Shown: positions 27,850 through 53,256 of the stretch, one piece after another
Layout: every line of letters begins with the position of its first letter
How positions within the stretch are numbered: the stretch's first letter is position 1
From: Schmidtea polychroa
Taxonomy: Eukaryota
Direction of reading: 5' to 3'
Length of the DNA: 64,000 nt
Assembly: GCA_044892525.1 (NCBI GenBank)
Contig: CM097885.1
Location: 78,802,001-78,866,000, forward strand
Position numbers and translations under genes: made by a program
The notes under the pieces: model-generated
What the model was told of the DNA's origin: nothing
Database searches by the model: none
Seen by the model: only the letters and a program-made list of their open reading frames with translations

Positions 27850-27939
27850 AAACACAATTACACTCACCACTACACTGAGCAGCAGCAATACGACAACTAT
27901 CTAGCAATTTGCAAGCATTGATTGAGTCTATACCTGTAT

Positions 27940-28030
27940 ATTTTTATGATTATTTTCGTTTATATTTATTATTATCATTATTATTATCATTATTATTATT
28001 ATCATTATCATTATTATTATCATTATTTTT
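27940..28030. repeat. (ATT/ATC)n microsatellite
   Basis: attatcattattattatcatt run. Confidence 0.85.
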
Positions 28031-29492: not shown

Positions 29493-32400
29493 TCATTTTT
29501 TCTTTTTTCCTTTTCCCTTCTTGCCTTTCTTTCCTTTTTTACCTTTCTTGCCCTTTCTCTTTTTCTTTCCATACGGACCCAATCCTTGGCGGGCACAAAT
29601 TGTTCTCCACCAACATTGGATTTTCAATGACGAGGCCACTTCCAGGGCTTCTTTCTCTTTCTTTCTTAGTAATTCTTCCTTTTCGATTCTATCTTTAAGG
29701 ACAACCAACTCGTATTCTTTATACTAAATATAAATAGCGTATTTGTGACATATTAATAAAACAATAAACTCACTGTCTGTGTTAATTCTAGCAAACGTTT
29801 CAAATCTTTGTCTTTGCTACTGTTGAGAATGCTTAAATTCTTTTTCAGAGTTTCGGTATCGGTTTCATATTTTTTCGTCCAATATTTCGTTTTAACTTCG
29901 ATTTTATCAAGATAATCTCGAAGCCAACTTTCAGTTTCATTGTGCACACGCTGTTCATTGTCAATCATTCGATCTAGACATGTTAGATCGGCATGAAGAT
30001 TTTGTTCGGTTTGCTGACAAATCTTGGCTGTCTGTGCTACTTGTGTCTCACATCTGGCTCGTGTGTATTTTAATTCCATGCTTGTTTTAGCTTTTGTCTC
30101 TTGCAACTGATCCTTCAAATGAGCAATCATCTCATTTCGATTTTGGATCTCTTCCAGTTCTTTTCGTTTGACATCTTCAACTTCTCTTTTCAGCTCTTTT
30201 ATTCGCTTGCGACTCAATTCCTCGCTAGATTAAATTTAATAAACCTCTTATTAGGAAACAGCTCAATCACTTTTTGATAACATCTAACAATTGCTGCTTC
30301 ATATTTAATTCATTCTCGACAGTTTTCATGAGATGATTAAACGAACCATTTTGCATTAGTTCTTCATGTGTGGCTGACAACACTTCTTGCAAAAATAATC
30401 TGTTTCATTTATTTAATTATAAATTTGGTAGTGATAATAATAAATTAAAAAGATATTGAAAATCATATAATTATTATTGTTGTTATAAATCTTAATCCGG
30501 GAAATAGAAATACCAACAGAGTAGTAGTAGTAGTCAACACACTATAAATTGGCTTTAGCAGTTAGTGACATAAAATTGACCAATTAAATTATTCCAAATC
30601 GGCCGCATAGCATTCCAGGCCAAAATGACAGTTGAAAGATATGCTTTAGTAATGTGTTTATCAAAAAGAGCTTGAAGACTATAAATCAGTAAATATATCG
30701 ATGTTTTTGATATTCACGAATTTTCGGCACTGTCTTTTTTCAAATTCACTTGAAAAAGGCAGTGCCGAAATTTTTCATAATCCTTCAGAATTAAGAATTA
30801 TCCCGAGGCTATTAAATATTCATGGCAAAATAACCGTGAAAATACTAGAGAAACGCATTTATGTGCAACACAAATAGAAACCACGCAACCAACGGTCAGC
30901 ATTATACAGTGATTAATTAGGGCCTAGCTATGTATTCCAAGAAGAATAAACTTGTTTCTATTTATTGAGTTACTCGTGTTTTCTCAAATAATCTTTCTGT
31001 TCAATAATGATTAAAATCATAGTTTATATTTTATAATATTAACAAATGCTGAATTCAATATAAAACGATGGTTTCGTGGTAGTCACGTCAATTAAAAATA
31101 AAATAATATAATAATTTTCAAGTTTTATTTAGAAAATGAGGTTTCATGAAAGCGTAACAAAATAAATTCTACTTGATAGATTTATTGAAGAACTTGATAA
31201 TAACACGTTGACGACAATCCGTGTTTTGACTTGGTTCTAGCGTAGGAAGACATGTTTTTCTCTTTTGACTCGTATGCATCATTTTTCATGTTTTCAATTG
31301 ACAGTGAAAAAAATTTTTGTTTAGATTTTTATTATTTTGAAAAAAAATTGAATATTTTTTTCAAATGATGATTTTGTAATTTATTTTTCAGGTTGCATAA
31401 ATATAAATTAATAAGTATTTAAAGAGTACATTGAAGATTACACTTAATGAAAAATAATTGTTTTAAAGTAATCAACCTAAAATATGTAAAACTGGAAACG
31501 GATGGTAATTATAAAAATTAAATCATATTAAATATTTCCAAGTTAGAATAGAATTCCTATGAGACGTGTTTGTCAATCGCAAGATTAAAAATCGATATAC
31601 AAAGGATTAAGTTGAGTTATGCTTAAGGCTAGCAAAAAGTTGGATAACGTACGCCCGGTTACTTGTCCGCTCGACAGACGGGTAACCGAATACCCCTTCA
31701 CACCACAATCTTGATATGAAATAGCACTACCTGTAACATCATGTACTTTGTTATTGCAGGAAGACGTAGATAACAGCAAGCGATCAGCGTGCATGGTACA
31801 GAACGACAGTAGCTAACAACTGATGCACGAATTTAATAAACTTTGTTTCTTTGGATAATTTCTGATTTTTGCCATTTTGGCTCATATTTTCACTGTTTTG
31901 AATAAAATATTTTTTATTTTGAATTTGAATTATAAACAGAACGAATGGGTAGTCGATCACTGATTTAGATACCCGGGTAACCGTTGAGAGCCTTAGTTAT
32001 GCTGCGAGATTCTGCAAGTTATTTTCAAGAAACCCGAGAAAAAGGAAACTATTTTTAAAAAAAAGATTCAATTAGAGAAGAGAAATTTATTAAACCTATT
32101 TTGGGTCAAAATATTTCATTTAATAACTTGAATTTCGAGGGCACTTTACAAGTCAAATTTATGAAATTTCTAAGTTATGGATTTCTTCAAATTATTAAAG
32201 ATGAAAACCTTTTATCTTATTGGTCACTGATTTCATTTTCATTTAAACCAGTGCAATAAATTCATGTTAAGTACATAAAAATATTAATCGATGGTCTAAA
32301 AATAAAAAATAAAGATGAAAAATAGAAAATCAATTTTTCTTCTTTTCTGAATAAGAAGAAACTACTACAGGATAGAATATATATTGAAGCTTGTTAAATA

Positions 32401-34332
32401 AAATCCTGAATCAGAAGAATAAAAATACGAAAATTGTATTTGGAATTGTACCAATGGGAACTGTTTAAATACAAGGTCAAAAATGAGGTTCAACGCGGGA
32501 TTTTGGTGTCAAAGGCTTTCCCGGATTAACTTACTAAAATATTGAATCAATCCATTAAAATCGTGAATTGTATCAAGTCGAATCAGCTAAGAAAATGATA
32601 AAAGACTTTTCCAGAGATTTGGATTTTTCTCTCACTATTTTCTCGTAAACCAAATAAGCTGATTTCAATTCAACAATTCCGAATAGTTCCTCAATAAAGA
32701 ATTATCAGAGGTGGCCACTTAAATTGTTCAACGTCAGAGGATTTTATAATTCGAGTTGATAATTGAATTCCGTTGTTTGGTATTTTCTTTAAATTCCAAT
32801 GGAAAAAAAAATAACAAAAGAATCAGTAAGAAAAATGGTCAATATATCCTCATCTTTATTACGAATTAAATCGAAATTTTTAAAACAAATTAATACAACC
32901 GTTAATAAAATTTATTAAATTTAATTAAAAATTATTAAAATTCTGTCAAAATTTGCAAATTAAAACAAAACTAATTCAATTTATAATTTTTTACATTATT
33001 TTATTTTTAACAGTTTTTATTAAAAGTAGTTTTATTTCAATCAATTACAGAATCCAACATGGCCTTATTAAATTTTAATTATAATTTGATTAATGATTTG
33101 TTTCGAAAGAACGCTTAATAAATTCTATTTTTCAATGAGAGGATAAAAATCTATAAACTGGAAACCAAATCAGTGGATAATCAATTTATACCAATGAAAT
33201 AAAATAGCAATTAAAATAAAGGTAATGACTAAAAACATTTTTAGATATCTTCCAATATTCACAATTTAATCTATTGCTAATTTACTTTTATTACCCTTTT
33301 GCTTTCGGTCCCTTTGCGTAGGTATCGCGGTGATGGTGATTCCCTAACTTTGACTGAAGAAAGAAATCTAATCGATTTGGGAAACAATTAAGTTTTCTAA
33401 GAACAATGTTTCGACGTTTTGAATTTCAGATCGGCGCCAATATTCTGAGTTAACTAAATAAGTTAACAAATCTTTGTTGTCTTTGTGTAGTTGATATTTG
33501 TAAATTTGGATTCTCAAGCCTAGCTGAAACGAAGTCGAAAAAATGAGTATAGTGGATTTGATGATGATTACTTGTGCGTATTTTTCTAATGCTGAGAAGC
33601 GTGTCGGTTCACAGAAACAATCCCAATTACCTCATCAAATATTTTGCACAATTCAAAGGAAATTTACACTGGTGTGCTGCAAAAAACTTTAGATATTTAG
33701 TATGCTGTGATATAGATGAGGATGAGAAATTTTAAAAATCAATATAATTTCAGTGTGAATCGTAGCTATTTACCATTTTCCCTCTTCACTATGCTTATTA
33801 AAATTAATTATATGTATATATAATTATAGTAATTATTTCATAATATTTTATTGAATTGTTACCTATCTTCTTGAACTTTCTTAATATTATCCAATGTCAA
33901 AGGATTATGATTCATATTTCGAGTAAAAACATGGACTGAATTTTTTAAATCATTTGAAATATCTTTAATTTGTTTCTTATAATGTTCAGCTTCACTTGGT
34001 AGTACTAATAAAATTAACAATTAAAACTTTAAGAATGTTTTGCTGTAAACTCCATACATCCTTTAGAATTGCTGTATTTGGTTAAAACATGCTGAAATCT
34101 TGTTTCGATATCCATATTATTGATAAGAATTTCTTCAACTTCACCATTTAAGATCTAAAGTTTAGTAATGGTTCAATTAACAAATAAAACCAAAATCTGG
34201 ACGTACGTCTAGCACATCTGGTTGCTCCACATAACTATAAGGCATTATTTTACCGAGAATATTAAGTTGTCGAACATTGTCTTCTAAAGCTGTGGCTAAA
34301 GCAACAGCTTCAGAATCGTATATTACAGACAT
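29493..34332 (-). CDS. IQCG: IQ motif-containing G / dynein regulatory complex subunit 9, 391 aa; exons 34332-34207, 34154-34058, 34004-33863, 30399-30271, 30224-29774, 29723-29493
   Basis: LEDNVRQLNILGKIMP, KKVQEDR, HLKDQLQETKAK, YWTKKYETD, IQ motif KIQCWWRTICAR and a GKK-rich tail match IQCG. All five introns are GT-AG with consistent phases. Confidence 0.93.
30675..30770 (+). repeat. Dispersed short repeat family; related copies near 35800, 38610-38680, 41705-41775, 44558 and 52408
   Basis: Shared core gaagactataaatcagtaa..atcgatgtttttgatattcacgaattttcg. This copy ends in a hairpin ttcggcactg...cagtgccgaa. Confidence 0.75.
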
Positions 34333-36399
34333 AATTTTATATTATCGAGTTTCTAAGATACATATTATTTAAACAAATCACGAAGATATAAAGATATTTC
34401 TGTTTTATTTGACAATTTTTAAAGGTATTTAATGATTAAATTAAATTAAATATAGAAAAAAATGTTATTTTTATGCATTTAAAAATACTTTAAAAAATAA
34501 TTTTGAAATGGATTTCTATCAGATATTGATAATTACATCTATTCAAATTAAAGACTATCCTCAAATGATATGACGTTATCATAAAAATTACTACAAATTA
34601 AATATGAAAGTTTATTTGCTTACAATAACTTCATACCTTCTTCCAATTAAATGAAATCGAAAATTTTGAGTTACTCACAAATTAAACATTTACTTATAAG
34701 ATTTGGATTCCCCAGAATTTTAATCAATACATTGTATTTTGGGATTTCCTGCCTTTGCGAATTCTTAACCAAAGATTTCACTCAAAAATATTATTGAATA
34801 TTATATGTTATACTGAGGTTCAGTAAGGAAGAAAGTAATATGTGATTTTGTTGATCTAACTTTGTCTTTTAAACTCATTTTACGTAGCTAAGCCATTATT
34901 AATTGTCATAAGTTTATTTGGTACAGCATCAATTACTATTTACTGTTGTAATAACAATTTAATTAAAATTTTGCAAATATATTTCTCCAATTTCTTTATA
35001 CTGCATGCAAATTCCTATTTTCCGAGACATTTTGTCAAAAAGTAACATCAAATTTAAACATCAAAATTATCAGAATCTACCGTAACCAAATTGTTCCACT
35101 TTTGATAATCAATTGACATTTAAATTTAAACTCTTTCCCATGTTCGAAAAAAAAATTTTTACGGTTGCGTTATTACAACATTTCGGTAGGAAATAAATAA
35201 TATTATGAATTTTCGTGTCCTTTCTATTGAAGAAACATAACTCAAAACAATAAACTTTATTTCCGATATAGTAATTCTAAATTTTTAATAGATAAGCACT
35301 CAACAATCACGAATTTTATATGCTCCGCAAGCTATTGTATTTAACTATATTGGTTTTAACTATGGGTAATCCCGAGGAGAATCGGCTCAAATTTTGTCAC
35401 ATAAGAATGTGACTTGACTTCTCTGCATGATCCTACTATTAATTTCTTTGAATAAGACGACAAATTAGATCATATTTATTTGATCTTATATAAGGATATC
35501 TCAACATTTATCAATAGAATTTTTAAACCATATCACTGTTTTACAAACTCCTTAACCTGAACAAAAAATTTATTTTCAATCACTTTTCTTCCGCTTGACA
35601 GTCTATTATTATATTTGTGTAGCTCAGGGACTTTTTTTCTAACTGAAATGATCAATGCCACCAACAGGATTTTAAATAATAAATTAATAAATTTGTATCT
35701 TAGTAATTAATAACCCATTAATTTAGAATAAATATATTTGTGTTTTATTGTTTCGTATGATGCCCCGATACCTTAAATTAAATTTATATATACGTGGTCA
35801 TCGATATATTACTGATTTATAGTCTTCAGTCTTTCTTTTTAATAAATTTAATAAATTCAATATTTAGTCGTATATATCTAAATATATTGGTATTTGTTTT
35901 AATCAGTTATTACTTAATTAATAAATTTTACAATTTATTTTAAAATACCCATCAAAAGAGTGCATTATTGCAGTGTCATTCGTTTTCTCTTTATAAAAAG
36001 CTGAGTGCTGTTTATGGCGATGAATAGTTATCAAATGCAACTATTTACCGTTGGCAGAATAAATTTCTGAGTGAAAGAACTTCAATTTATGATAAGGATA
36101 AGCCAAGTAGACATTGTGAAATCAAAGAAAAAAATGGAAGACCTAAAATATAGTTCAGGCTGAGTGAAAAATTACAACTAGAGAGTTAGTAATGCGCCTG
36201 AATGTGAGTAAAAGCACTACTTATACAATACTCAAATAAAGTAGAATAAGAAAATTATATTATCGCTTTGTATTATGTTTTTATTGCTGAAATACAAAAT
36301 CGACGTCTGTAGTGTTGCGAAGAAAATCTTCAAATCTTGGACGTTAGATAGCATTTTTTTGAGAATATTATTACCATGGATGAGATAACACTTTATTTA

Positions 36400-37020
36400 T
36401 GTTCCATAGTTTAAACTGGAATCTGAAATGTGGAAACTACATAGAGAGGTCTGTTCTAAGAAGATGAAGTCATCAACTAGTCATTGAAGGGCGCTCATAC
36501 TGACTGTGTTTTCGGATGTCAGTGGCATAATTCTAGTTGATTTTGCCAAAGTGGTGTTCAAATTAACAGCTCATAATACTACAAACTTGTGCAAGAAACA
36601 AGGAAGCTCCAGTCACAATTAGTGGTTATTGTTTTGGTTGGTTGTGAATTCATGTTACAATTACACAATGAAGCTCCAATGTAAAAGCATCGTGTGTGGG
36701 CTCTATGACTTACACGATAACATTTCCCATCCAAACGAGTGTAGTTTCAATGGGAAAAATTGAGAGTTGTGAACGTATCGTGCTTTTCCATCTTCCATAC
36801 AGGCCGGATTTGGCTCCTTTAGACTTATATGTGTTTAATCACCTCAAGAAATCTCCTGCGAGATCAGCCGTTTGCTATAAAATACCATTGTAAAAATGGA
36901 GTGACGCATTTTCTTCGTGAAAATTCTCCGAATTTCTTCAGAATCGCTTTCCAAACCCGAGTTTCACGCCGACAAAATGTGTCGATGTAAATGGAAATTA
37001 TTTTGAGAAATAAATCCTAC
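36400..37020 (+). mobile_element. Decayed mariner transposase remnant (left arm)
   Basis: HLPYRPDLAPLDLYVFNHLKK resembles mariner HPPYSPDLAPSDYxLF; upstream TVF.D..GIILVDF-like segment. Confidence 0.75.
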
Positions 37021-39227
37021 ATGACTTACTTCTTATAAATACAATATATTTGCGTTCGTTTATTTATTTCTATATGGGTCTCACTAGTTATAGGGCACAC
37101 CACGAATTTGATTTACATTCTAATATTTTTGTAAAATAATTCTTAGTATGAGGTCTTCTATAAATGAATACTTGTTTATATTTTTACAATTTAATTAAAC
37201 AGGGTGACATAGATGGTCACTATAATTTATTTATTTCTTTTTCCAATAACACTTTCACATAAATTAAACATTCTATTAAATTTTATATTTGTTATAATCT
37301 TAAAGTTTCTAATATTTCATCCAAAAGATTTATATTACTTTTTCTGAAAAAAATTTTTTACACCTTTTATTAAATTTTCCATTCAATTGTTGTGGTTCAA
37401 CAAGAAAGGTACAAAAATGAGGTTGTTGGGTTTTAATATTTTTGAGTCGGTACTGTCTGACTTCTTGTGTTCCTTTAATTGAAAATCACAAATAACAAAA
37501 CTACCCAACGTATATTACAAATTTTTACAATTAACCGGATATGCAAATAATATTATTTATCAATTACTCGATCAAGCTCTGCTGCATGATATCTGGACTA
37601 TGTGGGATTCACTATAAAAATCACCTTTTAATATTCTTGTTTTCCTTTAACGTTACTCTTTATTCTGATTCCCTAATTTCCTTTGATTCAATTCTTCCCT
37701 TTTTATTTTTTTGGTTTCCTTTAATCTTTTACTCTTCCCCTTTTTATCGTTTAACAATACTACTTTTTATTTCTTCAATTACCGTTTCCCTACCCTTTGT
37801 CTTCTCGTATCTTAATTTTCCTTCAAACCTAACCTCGATTTCTTCCATCCCTAACTAAGGCAAACTGCCGATTATTTTGAATTTCGACTTTGCTTTTATA
37901 CTAAAATAATCACTTTGATTAATTGGTTTTTGACCGGATCGCCTTTATCTGACAATGGTTTGACAACCGGTTTTATCGAACGCTTTTTGAACCATATAGT
38001 GATTAATTGCCTCCCTTTGTTAATCCTTTGTGGTAGCCATAAACTTTGTTTGTCTCCATTAATCATGCTGTCATGATAATGGCCTTCCGAGATTCTGATT
38101 TTGTTAATTTTCCATGTTAATCGAGCTCGGGTTTCCTTCATCTCTCGGGTTCTCTATTGGCTCGAGTTTCCTATTAGCTCGGGTTTTCTATTAGCCAATT
38201 AATTAATTAATTAAGGATTTTTTGTTTTAACACCTTCGAATACTTTTCGACTCTTTCTAAACATTTCTGATAAATTTCTAATCACCATCTTGTTAACCAT
38301 TACCTAATCTATACCTGCCTCGTTTTTCCGATTCAATTTCGATAAATTTAGAATTTATTGATTTTTTCGGATTTGCGAATTTTTGCCTTTCGTAACTGCT
38401 TTTGCTATTTCCTAATACTGTTTCCATCATAATTTCCTTTGCCACCAATTCTGTGCATGACCACAATTTTATTTGTCTTTTTCATTCGAACTACATTTTA
38501 TTTAAATTTCTTTTAATTTACTGACCTCAACAAGGTAAAAAATCAATAAAAACATCAAATTCACAATAATAATTTGAAGAATAAAAATATTATTTAAAAA
38601 AATGCACTTGGAAAAGGCAGTTCCGAAAATTCGTGAGTATCAAAAAACATCGATGTATTATTGATTTATAGTCTTCAAGCTCTCTTTTTCATAAATGTGA
38701 CTCCTATTGACGTTTTATTTTGATAAATCGTCTTTGCTTTGCTTTCAACTAAAACTTTTGTCCTGCATTTTTATTTGGTTTCCCCAAACGAAGTAGAAAT
38801 TTAAAAACTTTACAACACTTACATGTAACTTGTCGGTTAACGATTATTATAATTTCAATAAGGAATGATTGCATAGAGATTGACAAATAAGAAAGAGATT
38901 TACAAAGAAAAGAACAAATTAATTAAAGAAATAAAGAATTAAAAATTAAAACAAATTTGCTTCTCATTTAAAGGCAACCGAACAAATAGATAATTCTGTT
39001 AGTGAAATTATTAATGTGATTCCCTTGAATTGGAGCATTTGACATGGCGTGTAGATTGATATATATTACCAAATATCAAGTGTCTAATAATAGATAAAGC
39101 TGTGAAATGTATAGAAATAATAATTTAGCGATCGGAAAATCTGAGCGGGTGCGTTGAAAATGTATAGAATTATGAAATGGTAATGAAATAGAAAATGATA
39201 TAAATCGACGTGAAAATGAATTATTTC

Positions 39228-39381
39228 AAACTTACTTGGTGTTGGTGCTACCGTGATCACTCAGGCGGTACACCCGGAGCGAGGCTTTGTCATTGCACTG
39301 CGATGGGGTTGACCTCCGCGCTTCTCCAAATCGGATAAGTCGAACATGTAATTTTTGTTAGTGGGGACTTTCGGGTCCCTG
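39228..39381 (+). ncRNA. U1: Variant U1 snRNA (U1b), 5' end AAACUUACUUGG
   Basis: SL1 loop GAUCACUCAG, SL2 loop CAUUGCACU, SL3 CCAAAU, Sm site AAUUUUUG, SL4 GGGGAC-U-UUCG-G-GUCCCU. All stems pair. Confidence 0.92.
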
Positions 39382-39649
39382 ATGAAAATTAAATTAATAT
39401 TTTTTTATCTATCTTGTTTCTCAATACTTCAATTTATTATTAATATCAACGAAATATTATTTATCTCAATTCACTCAATAATTAAACTTTAACCAAAAAA
39501 AATTATAGTTCCATTAAACTAATGTAAATCAAATAATGAAGTCTGTAAAATTCTATTTTACAGCTTCGTTATAAATTATTTTAAGATAAAATCATTAGTA
39601 GCAGAAATTTGTGAATTTTATATTAGAGAATGGCTTGGTGAATAAATTC

Positions 39650-39804
39650 ATACTTACCTGGCGCGGTTTAACCATGATCATCGAGGTGGTTTTTCCAAGA
39701 TGAGATTACTTCATTGCACTCTGAAGTGGTTGACTCTTGCGACTGCTCCAAATAGGGGTGGCTCGAGCGCACAATTTTTGGTAGTGAGGACCATTTGGAT
39801 CCTT
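39650..39804 (+). ncRNA. U1: U1 snRNA (U1a), canonical 5' end AUACUUACCUGG
   Basis: SL1 loop GAUCAUCGAG, SL2 loop CAUUGCACU, SL3 CCAAAU, Sm site AAUUUUUG followed by GUAGUG, terminal hairpin AGGACC-AUUU-GGAUCCU. Confidence 0.96.
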
Positions 39805-40580
39805 ATTAATAATGGAAATTAATTATTTTAAACTACTATAGACTAAATTTTAAGAGAAAAAAATTTTTATGAAGAAATTATAATATGACTTTTTAAATTA
39901 TGTTAAATTTTATGCATTCAATCAACTTTTCAATAAGTTCAAAAAAACCAAAAAAAATTTAATTCAAAACTACTTACTAACTTTGACAGTAGTTCATTTC
40001 TAACATAATTAATTTTATTTGAAAAATATTTTGTCTAATATTAATTAAAATTATATCAAAAAAAAAATTTACTTAGGTTATTTCATGAATAAATCATAGA
40101 ACAATTCATTGGGAGGTATAGTTGATTGAATATGAATATAAGAGATAATATAACAACGAAAAGTGTTGATTAGGCAAGTTAGAGATGACTAAAAATTAGC
40201 CGTAAAGCTAATAAAATACGAATTTCAAAATTTATTAAATAAATGATATATATGGCTCTATGATACATTTATTAAATTCATTGTTTTTTAAAGTGCTAAA
40301 TTAAATATATGAAATAACCTAAGTAAATAATATAATTTAAATAATATTAGACAAAATATTTTTCAAATAAAATTAATTATGTTAGAAATGAACTACTGTC
40401 AAAGTTAGTAAGTAGTGTTGAATTAAATTTTTTTTGGTTTTTTTGAACTTATTGAAAAGTTGATTGAATGCATAAAATTTAACATAATTTAAAAAGTCAT
40501 ATTATAATTTCTTCATAAAAATTTTTTTCTCTTAAAATTTAGTCTATAGTAGTTTAAAATAATTAATTTCCATTATTAAT

Positions 40581-40735
40581 AAGGATCCAAATGGTCCTCA
40601 CTACCAAAAATTGTGCGCTCGAGCCACCCCTATTTGGAGCAGTCGCAAGAGTCAACCACTTCAGAGTGCAATGAAGTAATCTCATCTTGGAAAAACCACC
40701 TCGATGATCATGGTTAAACCGCGCCAGGTAAGTAT
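40581..40735 (-). ncRNA. U1: U1a, mirror copy
   Basis: Reverse complement of 39650-39804. Confidence 0.96.
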
Positions 40736-41003
40736 GAATTTATTCACCAAGCCATTCTCTAATATAAAATTCACAAATTTCTGCTACTAATGATTTTATC
40801 TTAAAATAATTTATAACGAAGCTGTAAAATAGAATTTTACAGACTTCATTATTTGATTTACATTAGTTTAATGGAACTATAATTTTTTTTGGTTAAAGTT
40901 TAATTATTGAGTGAATTGAGATAAATAATATTTCGTTGATATTAATAATAAATTGAAGTATTGAGAAACAAGATAGATAAAAAAATATTAATTTAATTTT
41001 CAT

Positions 41004-41157
41004 CAGGGACCCGAAAGTCCCCACTAACAAAAATTACATGTTCGACTTATCCGATTTGGAGAAGCGCGGAGGTCAACCCCATCGCAGTGCAATGACAAAG
41101 CCTCGCTCCGGGTGTACCGCCTGAGTGATCACGGTAGCACCAACACCAAGTAAGTTT
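41004..41157 (-). ncRNA. U1: U1b, mirror copy
   Basis: Reverse complement of 39228-39381. Confidence 0.92.
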
Positions 41158-43364
41158 GAAATAATTCATTTTCACGTCGATTTATATCATTTTCTATTTC
41201 ATTACCATTTCATAATTCTATACATTTTCAACGCACCCGCTCAGATTTTCCGATCGCTAAATTATTATTTCTATACATTTCACAGCTTTATCTATTATTA
41301 GACACTTGATATTTGGTAATATATATCAATCTACACGCCATGTCAAATGCTCCAATTCAAGGGAATCACATTAATAATTTCACTAACAGAATTATCTATT
41401 TGTTCGGTTGCCTTTAAATGAGAAGCAAATTTGTTTTAATTTTTAATTCTTTATTTCTTTAATTAATTTGTTCTTTTCTTTGTAAATCTCTTTCTTATTT
41501 GTCAATCTCTATGCAATCATTCCTTATTGAAATTATAATAATCGTTAACCGACAAGTTACATGTAAGTGTTGTAAAGTTTTTAAATTTCTACTTCGTTTG
41601 GGGAAACCAAATAAAAATGCAGGACAAAAGTTTTAGTTGAAAGCAAAGCAAAGACGATTTATCAAAATAAAACGTCAATAGGAGTCACATTTATGAAAAA
41701 GAGAGCTTGAAGACTATAAATCAATAATACATCGATGTTTTTTGATACTCACGAATTTTCGGAACTGCCTTTTCCAAGTGCATTTTTTTAAATAATATTT
41801 TTATTCTTCAAATTATTATTGTGAATTTGATGTTTTTATTGATTTTTTACCTTGTTGAGGTCAGTAAATTAAAAGAAATTTAAATAAAATGTAGTTCGAA
41901 TGAAAAAGACAAATAAAATTGTGGTCATGCACAGAATTGGTGGCAAAGGAAATTATGATGGAAACAGTATTAGGAAATAGCAAAAGCAGTTACGAAAGGC
42001 AAAAATTCGCAAATCCGAAAAAATCAATAAATTCTAAATTTATCGAAATTGAATCGGAAAAACGAGGCAGGTATAGATTAGGTAATGGTTAACAAGATGG
42101 TGATTAGAAATTTATCAGAAATGTTTAGAAAGAGTCGAAAAGTATTCGAAGGTGTTAAAACAAAAAATCCTTAATTAATTAATTAATTGGCTAATAGAAA
42201 ACCCGAGCTAATAGGAAACTCGAGCCAATAGAGAACCCGAGAGATGAAGGAAACCCGAGCTCGATTAACATGGAAAATTAACAAAATCAGAATCTCGGAA
42301 GGCCATTATCATGACAGCATGATTAATGGAGACAAACAAAGTTTATGGCTACCACAAAGGATTAACAAAGGGAGGCAATTAATCACTATATGGTTCAAAA
42401 AGCGTTCGATAAAACCGGTTGTCAAACCATTGTCAGATAAAGGCGATCCGGTCAAAAACCAATTAATCAAAGTGATTATTTTAGTATAAAAGCAAAGTCG
42501 AAATTCAAAATAATCGGCAGTTTGCCTTAGTTAGGGATGGAAGAAATCGAGGTTAGGTTTGAAGGAAAATTAAGATACGAGAAGACAAAGGGTAGGGAAA
42601 CGGTAATTGAAGAAATAAAAAGTAGTATTGTTAAACGATAAAAAGGGGAAGAGTAAAAGATTAAAGGAAACCAAAAAAATAAAAAGGGAAGAATTGAATC
42701 AAAGGAAATTAGGGAATCAGAATAAAGAGTAACGTTAAAGGAAAACAAGAATATTAAAAGGTGATTTTTATAGTGAATCCCACATAGTCCAGATATCATG
42801 CAGCAGAGCTTGATCGAGTAATTGATAAATAATATTATTTGCATATCCGGTTAATTGTAAAAATTTGTAATATACGTTGGGTAGTTTTGTTATTTGTGAT
42901 TTTCAATTAAAGGAACACAAGAAGTCAGACAGTACCGACTCAAAAATATTAAAACCCAACAACCTCATTTTTGTACCTTTCTTGTTGAACCACAACAATT
43001 GAATGGAAAATTTAATAAAAGGTGTAAAAAATTTTTTTCAGAAAAAGTAATATAAATCTTTTGGATGAAATATTAGAAACTTTAAGATTATAACAAATAT
43101 AAAATTTAATAGAATGTTTAATTTATGTGAAAGTGTTATTGGAAAAAGAAATAAATAAATTATAGTGACCATCTATGTCACCCTGTTTAATTAAATTGTA
43201 AAAATATAAACAAGTATTCATTTATAGAAGACCTCATACTAAGAATTATTTTACAAAAATATTAGAATGTAAATCAAATTCGTGGTGTGCCCTATAACTA
43301 GTGAGACCCATATAGAAATAAATAAACGAACGCAAATATATTGTATTTATAAGAAGTAAGTCAT

Positions 43365-43985
43365 GTAGGATTTATTTCTCAAAATAATTTCCATTTACAT
43401 CGACACATTTTGTCGGCGTGAAACTCGGGTTTGGAAAGCGATTCTGAAGAAATTCGGAGAATTTTCACGAAGAAAATGCGTCACTCCATTTTTACAATGG
43501 TATTTTATAGCAAACGGCTGATCTCGCAGGAGATTTCTTGAGGTGATTAAACACATATAAGTCTAAAGGAGCCAAATCCGGCCTGTATGGAAGATGGAAA
43601 AGCACGATACGTTCACAACTCTCAATTTTTCCCATTGAAACTACACTCGTTTGGATGGGAAATGTTATCGTGTAAGTCATAGAGCCCACACACGATGCTT
43701 TTACATTGGAGCTTCATTGTGTAATTGTAACATGAATTCACAACCAACCAAAACAATAACCACTAATTGTGACTGGAGCTTCCTTGTTTCTTGCACAAGT
43801 TTGTAGTATTATGAGCTGTTAATTTGAACACCACTTTGGCAAAATCAACTAGAATTATGCCACTGACATCCGAAAACACAGTCAGTATGAGCGCCCTTCA
43901 ATGACTAGTTGATGACTTCATCTTCTTAGAACAGACCTCTCTATGTAGTTTCCACATTTCAGATTCCAGTTTAAACTATGGAACA
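43365..43985 (-). mobile_element. Mirror copy of the mariner remnant
   Basis: Identical ORF at 43492-43689. Confidence 0.75.
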
Positions 43986-46331
43986 TAAATAAAGTGTTAT
44001 CTCATCCATGGTAATAATATTCTCAAAAAAATGCTATCTAACGTCCAAGATTTGAAGATTTTCTTCGCAACACTACAGACGTCGATTTTGTATTTCAGCA
44101 ATAAAAACATAATACAAAGCGATAATATAATTTTCTTATTCTACTTTATTTGAGTATTGTATAAGTAGTGCTTTTACTCACATTCAGGCGCATTACTAAC
44201 TCTCTAGTTGTAATTTTTCACTCAGCCTGAACTATATTTTAGGTCTTCCATTTTTTTCTTTGATTTCACAATGTCTACTTGGCTTATCCTTATCATAAAT
44301 TGAAGTTCTTTCACTCAGAAATTTATTCTGCCAACGGTAAATAGTTGCATTTGATAACTATTCATCGCCATAAACAGCACTCAGCTTTTTATAAAGAGAA
44401 AACGAATGACACTGCAATAATGCACTCTTTTGATGGGTATTTTAAAATAAATTGTAAAATTTATTAATTAAGTAATAACTGATTAAAACAAATACCAATA
44501 TATTTAGATATATACGACTAAATATTGAATTTATTAAATTTATTAAAAAGAAAGACTGAAGACTATAAATCAGTAATATATCGATGACCACGTATATATA
44601 AATTTAATTTAAGGTATCGGGGCATCATACGAAACAATAAAACACAAATATATTTATTCTAAATTAATGGGTTATTAATTACTAAGATACAAATTTATTA
44701 ATTTATTATTTAAAATCCTGTTGGTGGCATTGATCATTTCAGTTAGAAAAAAAGTCCCTGAGCTACACAAATATAATAATAGACTGTCAAGCGGAAGAAA
44801 AGTGATTGAAAATAAATTTTTTGTTCAGGTTAAGGAGTTTGTAAAACAGTGATATGGTTTAAAAATTCTATTGATAAATGTTGAGATATCCTTATATAAG
44901 ATCAAATAAATATGATCTAATTTGTCGTCTTATTCAAAGAAATTAATAGTAGGATTATGCAGAGAAGTCAAGTCACATTCTTATGTGACAAAATTTGAGC
45001 CGATTCTCCTCGGGATTACCCATAGTTAAAACCAATATAGTTAAATACAATAGCTTGCGGAGCATATAAAATTCGTGATTGTTGAGTGCTTATCTATTAA
45101 AAATTTAGAATTACTATATCGGAAATAAAGTTTATTGTTTTGAGTTATGTTTCTTCAATAGAAAGGACACGAAAATTCATAATATTATTTATTTCCTACC
45201 GAAATGTTGTAATAACGCAACCGTAAAAATTTTTTTTTCGAACATGGAAAAGAGTTTAAATTTAAATGTCAATTGATTATCAAAAGTGGAACAATTTGGT
45301 TACGGTAGATTCTGATAATTTTGATGTTTAAATTTGATGTTACTTTTTGACAAAATGTCTCGGAAAATAGAAATTTGCATGCAGTATAAAGAAATTGGAG
45401 AAATATATTTGCAAAATTTTAATAAAAAGAAAAATCAGATCAAAGGTGAACAAAAAAATAAAACACTTTACTCATCATCTATACATTTTTTGAGCAATTT
45501 ACACAGAAATATTCCGTGGAATCTTTAATAGGATAATTAAAATTTTCAAAATTTTTCTATTTGAATTGGTGTCATGTTAAGTGAGAAAGGGAAACGTTCT
45601 AAAGTTTGGTTTAGGGTATTTACCTCTCATAGAAATTAAAATAAATTATTATTATATTAGTTAGTTTGATATCTTCTATATGTTGACCATGACGAGTTAT
45701 TATGCTATCGAAGTAACGAAAGAATCCAAGCGTGATAAATCATAGGAAAACAGTAATTGGAAAAATAAATAAATTATAGGTGACCATCTATAATCTTAAA
45801 AAAATCTATAACCTTATATTATACAAAAATACAAACTTTGAATCCTTCACTTTTTTTCAAAATATAAAACTTAATAAAACTAAAATGGTAAAAGTCACTA
45901 TTTTTGCATAAAGTAAAATTGGGTAATTACAATAAAAGACTGGTTTTATATAGCATATTCAAATTAAAAATCTGTATTTCATTTTATCAATTACGTAGGA
46001 CATTTTTTAAAGTATCCGGTTCCTCTGGTTTATCCGACATTGGTATCAAATTATGTAAAGCTCAGTATAGTTCAATAAAACAACTCGAAAATTATTTTGC
46101 TAATAAAATCCTTACATTTTGGTAACAGATTCAATTTTGTTTATTTTTCGAGAATACGATTAAACTAAAAATTAATAGTTGTTTAAATGAATTAGTTATT
46201 TTGTTATATTTCAAATAATTCAAATTTTATTTCAGATGATATTTCTAAAAATTTCTAATTAAAATTGTGTAAACTGAAATTTATTATTATTATATAATTG
46301 GAATTTTTTGTTCGAACAAATACTGAATCTA

Positions 46332-47152
46332 ATGGCTAGTGATGTCATTGTCCGAGAGCCAGAGGTGAGAATTTCGCAGTTAAATAATCTAGAAATTTTA
46401 ATTTTTCAGAAAATTTTTCTGAAATGCGATATCGATTTAATGAAATTTCCTTCAGAATGGCAGGATATTCTACAGCCATTTTATCGAGTATGATTATTGT
46501 TGATTATTATCAATCTATTTAATTTTTACAGTTGTTCGAAACTCAAATTTACGAATGGGACAAATTTGAATTCATTGCTCCAGAGTCGATGTTCGAAAAA
46601 TTCGAACTCAAAGTAAATATCTTTTATAATTTTGAGAATATATCAGTTGAAATTTGATAATTAGAAAGTGGATTTAGGTATCAAAGATTGGTTGAACATG
46701 GATGAATGCGCCCAATTAGCACGAGACAAATATGGCGACAGAGTAATGCTGAATAAAGAGCAATTTAACGATTTGAGACGAATGGGAGAAATCCATGTCA
46801 AAAGCATTCAATTTCCAGGTGCAATAAATTCTTATTGATTATAGATAATACTCAATTAATTAATTAAAATTCAAAAAAATCAATTATAGTTTTGAGATAA
46901 ATGAGCAAACTAATAAAATATCCCGAATGAATCAATACTTATCAAAATGCTAAAAAGTAATTAACTAATTAATTAAAAAGTTTGATTTTTAAATACGTTT
47001 TAACACCTGAGGGAGATAGTACATTGAACAGGGCACAATTGATACCCTGCAATTATCGTGTTGATTTTATTCATCATGGAGAATTAATTTGGAATTTAGC
47101 CGCAATCAATTTCCATGGAAACATTCGAAATTCCATTGTAACAAAACTGTAA
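46332..47152 (+). CDS. Unidentified ~160-aa protein; exons 46332-46364, 46410-46487, 46532-46612, 46665-46818, and tentatively 47016-47152
   Basis: Three 44-52 nt GT-AG introns keep an open frame (MASDVIVREPE|KIFLKCDID...|LFETQIYEWDK...|KVDLGIKDW...). The acceptor of the last exon is uncertain. Confidence 0.7.
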
Positions 47153-49083
47153 TGGAAAATGATCTCGTGAGATCTGATTTGCTGTTGAATCTGATTGGAT
47201 GATGAGCTACACCAAATGTGTGTTGGTTTCGATTGGCTTTTACCTCTCTGCCTAAGTCACGTGGTATTCAATATTGTTCAAATTGATCTTTTCATTTATT
47301 GATGGACATAATATATTTCTTCGACATTTGACTTCCAGGAATTATATTCAAATATGAAATAGTGCAAATATCGATTTGTTGGACATATCTACGTTGTTTT
47401 TAATGCTGGATTCAGAGATCTTATAAAGCAAATTCATGCTCAAAAATAAAAAAAGAAAACACAATCAAGGTTTCCAACAGGTTATTAGCAATGGCATCAA
47501 ACGGCGACTTAGAATTAAAGAGTTGACTTAGACTAAAAATATTTAATCATAATTACATATTTTAGTTGCAATTTTTCCATTTTACATTATCACTGCTTAT
47601 GTTTCTTATTGTTGCAAATTATTGTTATAATGTTATTATATAATGATATAGAGTTATATATAGTAATATTTCCTCCAAATGACTCCACAAACATATCTGT
47701 AATTATATAAACATTACAAGCGTTGTGATACCCAGTGCAAATCCCAATAGTAGACTAGTTGCGAGCTTTTGGCTCTCATCAGTACTAAGCAGGAGACGCG
47801 AAAATTTCTCTTCGAGCCAGGAAAGTATACAATATTGCTGATTCAACTCTATTGCATAATTTCCCTGCTACACTGGAAATCACATCACGACACCATTGGA
47901 AGCTTAATGTAGAATTCAATTAAACATCAATTTGAAATCACAGAATTGTTTATATCTAGTTATTGTTGCTATTAGGCAAAAATCAAATTAACAAATTAAA
48001 TTTAATTAAAATCAGGTTTTCATTTGATAAAATTTAGATAGTTTATTCACTATTCGATTTTCCAATGGCAATGAAAATTAAATGACTGAAATGATTGAAA
48101 TGCCAAAATTTGCAATATTACTATGTTGATTAATTACGTTACATAATAATATAATTAGGTAATCGCATTATAAAAATTCACATTCACTCATACATTCACA
48201 TATTGAATTAGTCTTGACGTTCGGGGATTTCATCTGACCAGATCAGTTATCTGCAAATATGCATTCAGCTAGTAACTGATAATATTGCAGGCGACATTAT
48301 TCGAAGAACTATAAATGAATTACGAAAGACGATATTGGTAGTTTCTTTTATTCTGTCAGCGTTCAAGGAAGTATTGAAATGCATCGGTAGATGCAGCAAA
48401 TGTTATGAACAATGTTGATAGAAATGACGCTGGCCACAGAATGTTAAAATCTATGTCTAAACAATTCATTTCAAATGTGCAATGCCGATCCACACCGATC
48501 AATTAAAAGTGAAATCAAGGTTTAATGTCCAAAATTTATGATTTTAAAGAAACATTTACACTAATTGTTTTGTTTATACAATATGTTTACCAAAATGATA
48601 ATAATGACAAATTTTTCAACAGTTATGTTTATGTTGGTTATTTATAAACACTATTTTATATCATCGTTATTCAATGTTTGTTGAGAAACTGTGAAAGGAC
48701 GTTAAAAAGAATTTTTACTTTAATAAATGATATGTAATTTTATTGAATTAGCAAACCTTGATTCATTTATTGCATTTTTATTTTCGAGTAAAAGTTTTAC
48801 GACATTTCTATTTATCCTTTCATTATTCAATGCTATACTGATATTAAAAAAATTATATATAAGCTAAAGTTGTTCTAACAGAGGAGCTAATGGTATATGC
48901 AATAGATATGATAATTTACAATGACTGTCAGAAATCATATCAAAGCTTCAAATTTCTCTGTGATTTCTATAATAAATTCTATTAGTTCAATGTTTATATC
49001 CTTCCCGTTCTGCAATTAGATCCATATATGATATATCCATTTATATTCATTTCATTGACAGTAAATTATATTATAGAAAAATG

Positions 49084-49085
49084 AA

Positions 49086-49154
<69 letters not shown>
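49084..49154. repeat. (AAT)n microsatellite
   Basis: Over 20 AAT units. Confidence 0.95.
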
Positions 49155-49155
<1 letters not shown>

Positions 49156-49866
49156 TAGGTAAAGATCATGTTTGGAAAGTAAATCGATTTTTCCAGAAAG
49201 GCACGGATCGAACTTATAAGGACTTTCAAAAGGTAAGGAAAACATTAACATTTTAGTATATTATAATACAGAAAACGTAAATTTCACCTCATACGCCAGC
49301 GCATAGGGAGCGATATTAAATCTGGATGAACATCTGTGTGAGAATTGGTGAGAGCTGACAGGCAACAGAGTTCATATACATATTCTTTCAATATCATCTC
49401 GAGATAAAATTGTAAATAGAAAATAATTTGAAAACAAAATTCATATTTTACTGATGGGAGATTATTGACGAGCGATCTCTGAATCAGGAAATCATTTATT
49501 ACTATTACCTTTATTTTATCCAGTCTATCATTCAATTTGATTGAAATTTGATTTTGCACAAATAAATCTCTTCGATTTGTTGTGACGATGAATTATCACC
49601 AATTTTGTTATTTTACATGCAAATTGTGAGAGATTTGTTGTTGATAACTGCTGCTTTTAACTAGTGATACCATTTTTTGACTTCCGAACTTAGTCGTAGC
49701 TTAAAACAGGCACAATAAAATACATGCAGAGTGCAGGATGCTAAATAAGTAGCAATCAGCATGAAAAATTTAATAAAACAACTATTTAGTAAAATTTAGA
49801 AATAACAAATTAGTCATTATGACTTCCTTAATATGACATACACGATGATGGAAGGCCAGAAGAATC

Positions 49867-50904
49867 GGCGACGGTTTACTATATGCATCCCAAAAAAATA
49901 ATTAGTTAATAAATAAATTAATTAAATAATCATTTTATTTTAAACCTTAAAAATGCAAAATTATCCTGACTTATACATAATTTTTCAAATTAGCTCTGAT
50001 AAATTGGAATCTATTGAATACTTTCAGAGAAAAAACGTTTTAAAAAGTAATTTTAATTGTTTTTGTGGTCATCAAATGACTTTAATACAAAGAAATAATA
50101 TTACAGATGGATATACCTATAGATGTTCAAGAAAATGCTCTTCCTGCAGTGTAAGGAAAGATTCTTTTTTTGAGAAATCAAAGCTACCACTTTCTACATT
50201 GGTTTTGGGTATTGGGGGTGCCTAGCAATAAAATTTTAACAATGTTAAAGTTATCAAAAAAAACTTTGGCAGATTGGAATAATTTCTTTTCAGAAATTTG
50301 ATCGACCTCTTTACTAAATTTAAATAACGATGATCTCATGATTGGGTGAGAAGGAGTAATCACTGAAATCGATGAAACTCTTATCTCCAAAAAAACCAAA
50401 TATAATAGAGGTCGGAGATAGAGGGAAGTTTGGATGATGGGCGGTATTGACAGAGTTTCACAAAAATGGTTTGCGAGAGTTGTCGAAAGAAGAGATCGTG
50501 AAACTCTTGTTCCCTTAATCACTAGGCTCTATTATCCACTCTGATATGTGGCGTGGATATTATACCGAAACCTTCAATCTCGGAAATTTACCTGGATTAA
50601 ATTACACACCCTGCTGTTAATCACAAATTGGAATATGTTAACCAAGAAACTGGTGTTCATACCAACACTATTGAAGGATTATGAGGTAATTTAAAGACTG
50701 ATTTAAGAAGTAGAAGAGGAATGTCATTTACCGAAAAAATGGCTTTTATTGATTTTAAAATGTGGTTATCAAGGCAAAATACAACAGAAAATCATTTACT
50801 AAATATGTTTTTGTACGCAATTTCTGCCATAAAATAAATGATTATTTAATTGATTTATTTATTATTTAATTATTTTTTTGGGATGCGTATAGTTAACCGT
50901 CGCC
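49867..50904 (+). mobile_element. Merlin (IS1016/ISXO2-like) DNA transposon, 1038 bp, with inactivated transposase
   Basis: ~38-bp TIRs GGCGACGGTT..GCATCCCAAAAAAATAATTA with 2 mismatches. Perfect 8-bp TSD GAAGAATC. Motifs EIDET, WMMGGIDR, IHSDMWRGY, VNH, HTNTIEG, interrupted by frameshifts and stops. Confidence 0.95.
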
Positions 50905-51140
50905 GAAGAATCAAATCTATAGTTGCCAACTGCATACTGTTACATCTAGAGGATAAATAAGCGGTAATGATGTTTCAAATGATGCTAAATACCCCGAAAT
51001 CAATTATGTAAAACAAATTATTGTATAAAAATTGTTCTTTCATTCGATATTTAAGTCTATCATGCTCATGTTCTTCATCAAGTTATTAATGGGAGAATTT
51101 ATCGTTTGGACAATTGTAATTAAGGTTTTTCATAGAAAAG

Positions 51141-52265: not shown

Positions 52266-53256
52266 GTTAGATATAATCCATCGATAATTATGCCAAATTT
52301 TCAATTTTTTTTCATATAAGCTAATAATAATGACATGAATATATAAGAACTTTTTTTTCAAATTTCACCACTGATTTATTTTCCATTTTATTTATTAAAA
52401 AGCTTGGTCAGTAATATATCGATGTTTTTGATATTCACGAATTTTCGCTGCTGCCTTTTCCAATTGAATTTATGGAATATATCAATAAAATAATTATCAG
52501 ATAAAATAATAATTATAATTCCAAATTGATAAAAACTGATAGAAAAATAATTATTGCAATTAATCAAATTAAAATCAAGTGTTAATTAATTATGAGAAAT
52601 AAAAAAATTTGACTGGTATGTAAAAACCCCAAGCGATAATTGATAAAAATAATAAGGTTAGGTTTTCATCAAAATCAAATAATTAGAAAAGATTCTTCAG
52701 TATAAAGGCGAGATGTTGCCTGTCTAATTATTTTATTCGTAGGAAAGATGCCGCTTACGAAATTGTTTTTGCCGAGCGATGTTGTTGCGTAATTTAATTA
52801 TTTTCATAATAAAAAAGAGTGACATTGGTAACCTGTTGCCAGTTTTATCGAAGACAGACAAGAAAAAGAATAACTTAAAGGAGAAGAGTCGACAGAGAAG
52901 TAGAGATAATCTATCAATTAAAGAGCATCTAACGAAAAACATAGGTTATTTCCCTTTGGGATATCTACCTTAAAATATAATCTTTGAAATGTGAGGATCG
53001 TAGTTTATGATATTGCAAAGAATTGTTTTGAAATTAAATAAAGTATTTTGTATTGGGTCTTATTTAATTATTTGAAACAAAGAGCACGAGGTGCCAGACT
53101 TGACGATAACCCAAAAACTGTTATTTTTATCAAGAGTTCTTGAGATATTTCGATATAAATTTTTTTTATTTTTCAAATAAAAGTCGAATTAAAAATTTTA
53201 TAGCGACAGATTTAATTTTCTTACTGTACATAGTTTGTGTACCATTGGTTTATATC

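What the first reader, a model, noticed from the sequence alone, without database searches (positions are those of the whole stretch)
34962..45423. 10.46-kb near-perfect palindrome centred on the U1 gene pair
Seen: arms of ~5.1 kb are collinear without indels over about 5 kb, with at least four substitutions. Identity decays next to the 222-bp spacer (poly-A indel, then only vestigial symmetry such as tcatagaac / gctctatga). The only recognisable functional content is the four U1 genes near the centre; an old mariner relic is mirrored too. No TSD or transposase marks the outer ends. Inference: a real fold-back duplication whose arms may be homogenised by arm-to-arm gene conversion. This would double U1 dosage and could preserve both variants.
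Basis: partly seen in the sequence, partly recalled or inferred. Interest (0 to 1): 0.72.

Follow-up and report, generated by a model that had tools for sequence, protein, structure and literature searches.

The report
Palindromic U1 snRNA gene locus, planarian
A real-looking 10.5-kb inverted duplication in a planarian-type genome carries two copies each of the main U1 splicing RNA gene and a known stem-cell-enriched U1 variant; it is an ordinary but clean example of a gene-bearing palindrome whose arms appear to be kept alike by copying from one another.

Summary
Window 34962-45423 is an inverted repeat. The arm cores are 5,082 nt, ungapped and 99.92% identical (4 substitutions). A short degraded inner zone follows, then a 222-nt asymmetric spacer. 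Each arm carries two U1 genes that converge on the centre.

They match published Schmidtea mediterranea genes to within one base each. The inner gene is U1A1, the uniformly expressed major form. The outer gene is U1C-type, neoblast-enriched, with a C-to-U change at the base that pairs with 5' splice-site position -1.

The published coordinate table shows the same C-A-A-C inverted quartet on two scaffolds of an older, independent assembly. Its spacings differ from the window but are mirrored in both arms. This argues against an assembly chimera and for concerted evolution.

The four arm differences all lie within 470 nt of an arm end (max-gap P = 6.5e-4). Gene conversion fits that pattern, but so does consensus polishing of a repeat interior.

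There is no target-site duplication, no transposase and no symmetry beyond the outer ends or inside the spacer. The "vestigial symmetry" is at chance level.

Verdict: a new member of a known kind, a gene-bearing palindrome. The genes were already known; the palindromic layout was not discussed in the paper read here. Interest is moderate to low.

The parts
34962..45423 (.). Whole palindrome, 10,462 nt
34962..40086 (+). Left arm, 5,125 nt. Core 34962-40043 is ungapped against the right arm; 40044-40086 is the degraded inner zone.
40087..40308 (.). Asymmetric spacer, 222 nt, about 24% G+C. No residual symmetry beyond chance.
40309..45423 (-). Right arm, 5,115 nt. It is 10 nt shorter than the left arm because of the 1-nt and 9-nt indels near the spacer.
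39228..39381 (+). U1C-type variant U1 snRNA gene, 154 nt. It has U instead of C at the base pairing with 5' splice-site position -1. It is one base from each of the published U1C1 and U1C2.
39650..39805 (+). U1A1-type canonical U1 snRNA gene, 156 nt. By eye it differs from the published U1A1 by one base in loop I.
40580..40735 (-). U1A1-type gene, the mirror copy. It converges on the left copy, with 774 nt between their 3' ends.
41004..41157 (-). U1C-type gene, the mirror copy
39382..39398 (+). Candidate 3'-box-like motif (ATGRAAATTAA...) just after the U1C-type gene. Its mirror is at 40987-41003(-).
   Evidence: function is inferred, not tested
39812..39826 (+). The same motif 7 nt after the U1A1-type gene. 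Its mirror is at 40559-40573(-).
   Evidence: function is inferred, not tested
36672..36987 (+). Mariner-like transposase relic. Only a C-terminal fragment is recognisable, the rest of the gene is missing, and the fragment is read in more than one frame.
   Evidence: weak; only SETMAR/Mos1 hits; no Pfam hit
43398..43713 (-). Mirror copy of the mariner-like relic
38612..38695 (.). Short dispersed repeat of about 85 nt inside the arm. Other copies lie at 35799-35846, 30657-30738 and 52408-52471. Its mirror is at 41690-41773.

Best explanation
This is a genuine genomic palindrome in a Schmidtea-type planarian genome. A roughly 5.1-kb segment holds the tandem gene pair U1C-type then U1A1-type. It is present twice in inverted orientation around a 222-nt unique spacer, so the four U1 genes converge on the centre.

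Shown:
- the structure itself;
- the identity of the genes;
- their structural integrity;
- the same quartet in an independent assembly.

Inferred:
- The arms are kept nearly identical by recurrent intrachromosomal (arm-to-arm) gene conversion. Conversion reaches the arm ends less often, so differences and indels accumulate only there.
- The effect is two co-evolving copies of both the major U1 and the stem-cell-enriched variant.
- The structure arose by an inverted (fold-back or template-switch) duplication. That mechanism leaves no trace that could be read here.
For: Structure:
- 5,082-nt ungapped arm cores at 99.92% identity, a 222-nt spacer, and unique flanks on both sides. The nearest N runs are about 15 kb and 9 kb away.

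Genes:
- four U1 hits, 105-111 bits.
- the two U1 types are only about 70% alike, yet 10 of 33 pairs changed on both sides and none is broken. Both are old, constrained RNAs, whereas the arms are near-identical.
- published S. mediterranea primers for U1A1, U1C1 and U1C2 match the window's genes. U1A1 is uniformly expressed. U1C1/C2 are neoblast-enriched and carry the same C-to-U change.

Independent assembly:
- the quartet C(+) A(+) A(-) C(-) lies on scaffold8222 and scaffold15591 of an older assembly.
- The C-to-A intergenic lengths are 283/283 and 280/283 nt there, against 268/268 here. The length difference between versions is mirrored in both arms.
- The one-base differences of the window's U1 genes from the published ones are also present in both arms.
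- The 3' flanks differ from the published flank primers at 1-2 positions within about 10 nt of the gene ends, yet are identical between the window's arms.

Distribution of differences:
- all four differences lie within 470 nt of an arm end, and 4,538 nt in the middle have none (max-gap P = 6.5e-4).
- the inner 43 nt carry 2 indels and 2 substitutions, far above the 0.08% of the core. This implies an age greater than the core identity suggests.
Against: - No reads, depth or population data were available, so physical existence in this individual and the fixed or allelic status of the four differences are untested.
- The end-clustering is also what a consensus polished with short or multi-mapping reads would give. 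Differences survive only within about one insert length of unique anchor sequence, and all four lie within 470 nt of one.
- The comparison with the older assembly rests on published coordinates, short primers and listed RNA sequences, not on the scaffold DNA. It is unknown whether those scaffolds are orthologous, allelic or paralogous to this locus.
- The A-to-A distances differ (774 versus 875 and 922 nt), which independent fold-back events could also produce.
- The arms show no G+C excess of the kind biased conversion might give (0.294 against 0.322 and 0.274 in the flanks).
Confidence: 0.65

Rival explanations
1. A young, one-off inverted duplication. The arms are alike only because too little time has passed, and no gene conversion is acting.
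For: Core divergence is only 0.08%. The outer boundary is abrupt with no eroded homology beyond it. Young, closely spaced inverted duplicates are common in some invertebrate genomes (PMC3194840).
Against: The differences are not uniformly spread (P = 6.5e-4). The inner zone is much more diverged than the core. The same quartet exists in other versions with different spacings and flank bases that are mirrored in both arms. Without conversion, that would need repeated independent formation of the same layout.
Confidence: 0.15
2. An assembly effect. Either the arms are real but their interior identity is overstated by repeat collapse or polishing, or (less likely) the second arm is a false inverted duplication from a chimeric read or haplotype misjoin.
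For: All four surviving differences lie within 470 nt of unique anchor sequence, as expected if interior reads could not be assigned to an arm. The window has N runs elsewhere, so the assembly is not gap-free.
Against: There are unique flanks on both sides and a 222-nt unique spacer with genomic composition and no internal hairpin. No gap adjoins the structure. An independent older assembly shows the same inverted quartet on two scaffolds. On one of them the arms are resolved as slightly different: U1C2 against U1C1, and 280 against 283 nt.
Confidence: 0.15
3. A foldback-type or long-TIR mobile element that captured U1 genes.
For: Long inverted termini. The quartet occurs on more than one scaffold in the older assembly. 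A mariner-like relic lies inside.
Against: No target-site duplication. No intact transposase; the mariner-like piece is a short internal relic mirrored in both arms. The arms are not built of subrepeats; only one 17-nt tandem repeat of 2.5 units is present. No other copy of the arm ends occurs in the window.
Confidence: 0.03

Closest known systems
Schmidtea mediterranea U1A1 and U1C1/U1C2 snRNA genes (Schmidt et al. 2018, PMC6312358)
   Same: Gene sequences match to within one base each. The C-to-U change at the 5' splice-site -1 pairing base is the same. Their coordinate table shows the same C-A-A-C inverted order on scaffold8222 and scaffold15591.
   Different: Intergenic lengths and immediate 3' flanks differ (268 versus 283 nt; 774 versus 875 and 922 nt; 1-2 primer mismatches). 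The window is therefore another strain, haplotype, paralogue or sister species. The paper's main text never uses the words inverted, palindrome or tandem.
Actively maintained long inverted repeats with gene pairs in Caenorhabditis (Zhao et al. 2007, PMC1803023)
   Same: Kilobase-scale, nearly perfect inverted repeats that include convergent homologous gene pairs and intergenic DNA. The structure is more conserved than the sequence, which implies active homogenisation.
   Different: Those involve protein-coding pairs in nematodes. Here the cargo is two kinds of snRNA gene, and the cross-species comparison could only be done from published coordinates.
Sex-chromosome palindromes of primates (e.g. 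human Y P1-P8; PMC3723533)
   Same: Arm identity above 99.9%, a unique spacer, gene cargo, and arm-to-arm gene conversion (abstracts).
   Different: Those arms are 10-1000 times longer, lie on non-recombining or sex chromosomes, carry testis genes and show GC-biased conversion. Here the arms are 5 kb, the chromosomal setting is unknown and no G+C excess is seen.
Variant U1 snRNA gene families (human vU1, PMC3561869; Drosophila, PMC10645366)
   Same: Multi-copy U1 families with differentially expressed variants, some altered in the 5' splice-site recognition sequence (abstracts).
   Different: I know of no description of a major/variant pair duplicated as a tight palindrome in those systems. 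This rests on my own knowledge and was not searched exhaustively.

Membership tests
Gene-converting genomic palindrome (maintained inverted repeat) | Two arms in inverted orientation with more than 99% identity over kilobases | tested here: met
   5,082 nt ungapped, 99.92% identical
Gene-converting genomic palindrome (maintained inverted repeat) | A unique, non-duplicated spacer between the arms | tested here: met
   222 nt, symmetry at chance level
Gene-converting genomic palindrome (maintained inverted repeat) | Arms more alike within a palindrome than the same arm between related loci or species (concerted evolution) | tested here: inconclusive
   Spacing and single-base differences from the published versions are mirrored in both arms.
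Gene-converting genomic palindrome (maintained inverted repeat) | Non-uniform divergence, with a homogenised interior and diverged arm ends | tested here: met
   Max-gap P = 6.5e-4. Polishing of a repeat interior could mimic this.
Gene-converting genomic palindrome (maintained inverted repeat) | Physical confirmation by spanning molecules and twofold depth | not testable with these tools
   No read data
U1 spliceosomal snRNA (Rfam RF00003) | Full-length match above the gathering score | tested here: met
   105.4 and 110.9 bits against 69.5, model positions 1-166
U1 spliceosomal snRNA (Rfam RF00003) | Stems kept through compensatory changes; loop I, loop II and Sm-site sequences present | tested here: met
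   10 of 33 pairs changed on both sides, none broken. The loops and Sm site align to the model.
U1 spliceosomal snRNA (Rfam RF00003) | Expression and snRNP function | not tested
   Expression is reported for the near-identical S. mediterranea genes (PMC6312358), not for this locus.
Foldback or long-TIR DNA transposon | Target-site duplication at the outer ends | tested here: not met
   The flanks differ
Foldback or long-TIR DNA transposon | Own transposase, or subrepeat-built termini | tested here: not met
   Only a short mirrored mariner-like relic and one small tandem repeat
Fold-back assembly chimera | No unique spacer, position at a contig end or gap, and absence from other assemblies | tested here: not met
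   Unique spacer and flanks, no adjacent N run, and the quartet is present in an older assembly

The most novel reading that the evidence does not exclude
Tight convergent palindromes may be a selected, conserved way for planarians to house essential snRNA genes. The published table also shows U4 in a convergent inverted pair about 800 nt apart. Arm-to-arm conversion would act as a local repair and quality-control device for the major U1 and the stem-cell-enriched U1C variant. That would matter in lineages that often reproduce by fission without meiosis, and would parallel what is proposed for Y-chromosome palindromes. A side effect: read-through from either inner U1 gene would give a perfect hairpin RNA of about 280 bp, which could feed small-RNA pathways.
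Probability: 0.2. Interest if true: 0.6.

Novelty: new member of a known kind. Interest (0 to 1): 0.4.

Why it matters
It links two known things that have not been put together: a stem-cell-enriched U1 variant with an altered splice-site recognition base, and a palindromic gene architecture that homogenises its copies.

If the conversion reading holds, the major and variant U1 genes are forced to co-amplify. They sit 268 nt apart in one unit, yet each is protected from decay.

Their different expression must then be encoded in a very short intergenic stretch, which is a tractable target for descriptive promoter comparison.

It would also be a small, easily sequenced model palindrome outside sex chromosomes. 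Otherwise it is an ordinary segmental inverted duplication.

Tried and rejected
- Exact-protein look-ups for three window ORFs found no contig, so no independent assembly of the arms could be fetched.
- The homologue search with the 236-aa ORF found nothing.
- Two metagenome scans with U1A1 and U1C internal sequences found nothing.
- The closest contig for the neighbouring DRC9-like exon (81% identity, L001, 2.3 kb) is too short to reach the palindrome.
- Pfam on all arm ORF pieces gave nothing meaningful.
- A permissive Rfam scan of the arm outside the U1 genes gave only chance-level hits. No tRNAs were found.
- The sigma-70 promoter and terminator scan is irrelevant for a eukaryote and gave background counts.
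- No shared upstream promoter element (PSE) could be defined from two genes. Only the last ~14 nt before the genes and a 3' motif are shared.
- Tests for residual symmetry in the spacer and beyond the outer ends were negative.
- The window's U1C being a mosaic of U1C1 and U1C2 was considered as evidence for conversion. It was rejected because an ancestral state explains it equally well.
- I did not align the full published RNA sequences by script, so as to avoid pasting long strings. The one-base differences rest on reading side by side, plus primer matches.

A slip to report: in my reasoning I recalled from memory a short conserved mariner transposase motif, and the general splice-site pairing scheme, as leads. 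The mariner claim rests only, and the -1 pairing statement on PMC6312358.
Full report
**1. The observation**

The repeat finder finds one long inverted pair in 30-50 kb, and it is by far the longest in the whole window. A base-by-base check on the axis i + j = 80385 gives an ungapped core, 34962-40043 against 40342-45423. That core is 5,082 nt with four substitutions (35014, 35137, 35429, 39968), or 99.92% identity.

Towards the centre the register breaks. There is a 1-nt indel, a substitution, a 9-nt poly-A indel and another substitution, and then a last identical 19-nt block ending at 40086 / starting at 40309. The arms are 5,125 and 5,115 nt, and the whole structure is 10,462 nt.

Inside the spacer, the left half and the reverse complement of the right half align no better than shuffles do (686 and 759 of 1000 shuffles reach the score). 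The quoted 'vestigial symmetry' is therefore chance.

Outside the outer ends, homology stops abruptly (171 of 300 shuffles reach the score) and there is no target-site duplication. The four N runs of the window are far away, the nearest ending at 20130 and starting at 54834.

**2. Content of the arms**

Rfam finds four full-length U1 genes and nothing else at gathering level in the 64 kb. Nothing beyond chance appears in the rest of the arm at permissive thresholds, and there are no tRNAs.

In each arm the outer gene (39228-39381, mirror 41004-41157) and the inner gene (39650-39805, mirror 40580-40735) point towards the centre. The two inner genes therefore converge, with 774 nt between their 3' ends.

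The two types are only about 70% identical in the coding part. Even so, on a common fold 10 of 33 pairs changed on both sides and none is broken. The loop I, loop II and Sm-site sequences align to the model. Both are thus old, structurally constrained RNAs, not a gene and its decaying copy.

The inner gene has the canonical 5' end of the Rfam consensus. The outer one differs at two positions of the first twelve.

Both genes share the last ~14 nt before the first base, and a motif (ATGRAAATTAA...) 1-7 nt after the 3' end. I take the latter as a candidate 3' box; this is inference.

The rest of the arm is AT-rich non-coding DNA. It holds a small dispersed repeat, one 17-nt tandem repeat and a short mariner-like transposase relic. 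The relic gives no Pfam hit. Its only PDB matches at E<=10 are six SETMAR/Mos1 chains on one motif. Only a C-terminal fragment is recognisable, and it is read in more than one frame.

**3. Whose genome, and which genes**

The neighbouring exon at 29756-30229(-) belongs to a DRC9/IQCG-like gene. Its best named relative is from the flatworm Macrostomum lignano at 48% identity, followed by vertebrates. One unnamed 81% hit comes from a sequencing-run assembly.

A literature search led to Schmidt et al. 2018 (PMC6312358) on Schmidtea mediterranea snRNAs. Their S1 Table lists the RNA sequences and loci.

- Read side by side, the window's inner gene equals their U1A1 except for one base in loop I.
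- The outer gene is one base from U1C1 and one base from U1C2.
- Their primers confirm this by script. U1A1 forward and reverse, U1C2 forward and U1C1 reverse match exactly, in both arms. U1C1 forward and U1C2 reverse each have one mismatch. Primers for U1A2, U1B1 and U1D1 do not match.
- Primers that reach into the 3' flanks show one or two mismatches.

The window is therefore from Schmidtea, but from another strain, haplotype, paralogue or sister species than the assembly used in that paper.

According to the paper, U1A1 is uniformly expressed. U1C1/C2 are enriched in neoblasts and carry a C-to-U change at the base that anneals to position -1 of the 5' splice site. That is the change seen in the window's outer genes.

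**4. Independent evidence for the layout**

The same S1 Table gives the following coordinates.

| Version | Gene order and positions | C-to-A intergenic length, two arms | A-to-A distance |
|---|---|---|---|
| scaffold8222 | U1C1 12132-12285(+), U1A1 12569-12724(+), U1A1 13600-13755(-), U1C1 14039-14192(-) | 283 / 283 nt | 875 nt |
| scaffold15591 | U1C2 5837-5990(+), U1A1 6271-6426(+), U1A1 7349-7504(-), U1C1 7788-7941(-), plus one more U1C1 further out | 280 / 283 nt | 922 nt |
| This window | U1C-type(+), U1A1-type(+), U1A1-type(-), U1C-type(-) | 268 / 268 nt | 774 nt |

This is the same convergent C-A-A-C quartet. The paper's main text does not use the words inverted, palindrome or tandem.

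Two points follow.

- The inverted arrangement is not peculiar to the assembly behind this window. That argues against a chimeric-read or haplotype-misjoin artefact.
- Length differences between versions, the one-base differences in both U1 types, and the flank differences seen with the primers are all present in both arms of the window. Changes that distinguish versions but are mirrored within a version are the signature of concerted evolution. This is the argument used for maintained inverted repeats in Caenorhabditis (PMC1803023).

The caveat is that I had coordinates and short sequences only, not the scaffold DNA. I do not know whether these scaffolds are orthologous to the window.

**5. 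Gene conversion or youth or polishing**

The four core differences lie 52, 175 and 467 nt from the outer end and 75 nt from the inner end of the core. The 4,538 nt between them have none. For four uniformly placed points, the probability of so large an empty stretch is 6.5e-4.

The inner 43 nt are far more diverged than the core. A simple young duplication predicts uniform, very low divergence. Conversion tracts that seldom reach the arm ends predict what is seen.

A technical rival predicts the same picture. If the consensus was polished with reads that cannot be assigned to an arm, true differences survive only within about one insert length of unique sequence, and all four lie within 470 nt of such an anchor. 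The window alone cannot separate these two readings.

On scaffold15591 of the older assembly the two arms were resolved as slightly different (U1C2 against U1C1; 280 against 283 nt). This shows that arm differences can exist and can be assembled at this locus.

The arms show no G+C excess (0.294 against 0.322 and 0.274 in the flanks). At the three outer differences the left arm has C, C, G and the right arm T, T, A, but without an outgroup the direction of change is unknown.

**6. Context**

The palindrome lies between two divergently transcribed genes.

- On the left is the DRC9/IQCG-like gene, on the minus strand. Its first recognisable coding exon starts about 630 nt from the left edge.
- On the right, on the plus strand, is a gene with two exons matching Pfam 'Lips' (PF25228). 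The first is 1.2 kb from the right edge.

Because the inner U1 genes converge, a transcript that reads through either one would be self-complementary. The 774-nt stretch between the genes folds into one long hairpin at -376 kcal/mol, against -114 for shuffles. Whether such read-through occurs is not known.

**7. Rivals and verdict**

A mobile foldback element is unlikely. There is no target-site duplication, no transposase, no subrepeated termini and no other copy of the arm ends in the window. A wholly false second arm is unlikely for the reasons given in section 4.

I put about 0.65 on a real palindrome homogenised by arm-to-arm conversion. I put about 0.15 on a real but merely young duplication, about 0.15 on assembly effects (mostly overstated interior identity), and a few percent on a mobile element.

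The genes themselves are already known. The palindromic housing of the U1A1/U1C pair appears not to have been discussed, and it is a new member of a well-known kind of structure. Interest is moderate to low.

**8. Slip**

Neither was entered into a tool, and the claims above rest and on PMC6312358.

Noticed in passing
window ~5500-10900, minus strand (possibly bounded by the repeats 1837-1918 and 14241-14322): LTR-retroelement-type pol region with protease, reverse transcriptase, RNase H and integrase domains. It is split over at least four ORFs, so there are at least three breaks (stops or frame changes, not resolved). An 82-nt direct repeat 12.4 kb apart, 98% identical, may belong to its ends.
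   Followed up: partly
window 49865-50906: A pair of 76-nt inverted termini, 91% complementary and 890 nt apart, encloses a 90-aa Cys-rich ORF (49953-50225). It is probably a small TIR transposon remnant. No Pfam hit.
   Followed up: partly
window 29496-34341, minus strand: DRC9/IQCG-like ciliary gene (dynein regulatory complex protein 9). The best named relative is Macrostomum lignano at 48%. Its 5' end lies about 630 nt from the palindrome's left edge.
   Followed up: partly
window 46665-46835 and 51991-52212, plus strand: Two exon-like pieces match Pfam PF25228 'Lips protein', just below the gathering score. A gene therefore starts about 1.2 kb right of the palindrome and is transcribed away from it.
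   Followed up: no
window 26130-27849, plus strand: Two adjacent long ORFs in a 45% G+C island. Homologues were sought only for the first ORF (none found), and neither ORF has a Pfam hit. They carry Cys/His motifs and long Asn runs. Possibly a lineage-specific gene.
   Followed up: partly
window 38612-38695, 35799-35846, 30657-30738, 52408-52471: A short dispersed repeat of about 50-85 nt, 86-88% identical, occurs both inside and outside the arms.
   Followed up: no
S1 Table of PMC6312358 (not in the window): scaffold1032:119221-119364(+) and 120166-120309(-): U4 snRNA genes of S. mediterranea also sit in a convergent inverted pair about 800 nt apart. The spacing resembles that of the U1A1 pair, which hints at a recurrent layout for snRNA genes.
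   Followed up: no
window 19370-19950 and 27916-28033, 49033-49170: AT-rich, imperfect short-period repeats (multiples of 3 nt) next to an N run. They account for most of the other 'inverted repeat' rows and are low-complexity matches.
   Followed up: no
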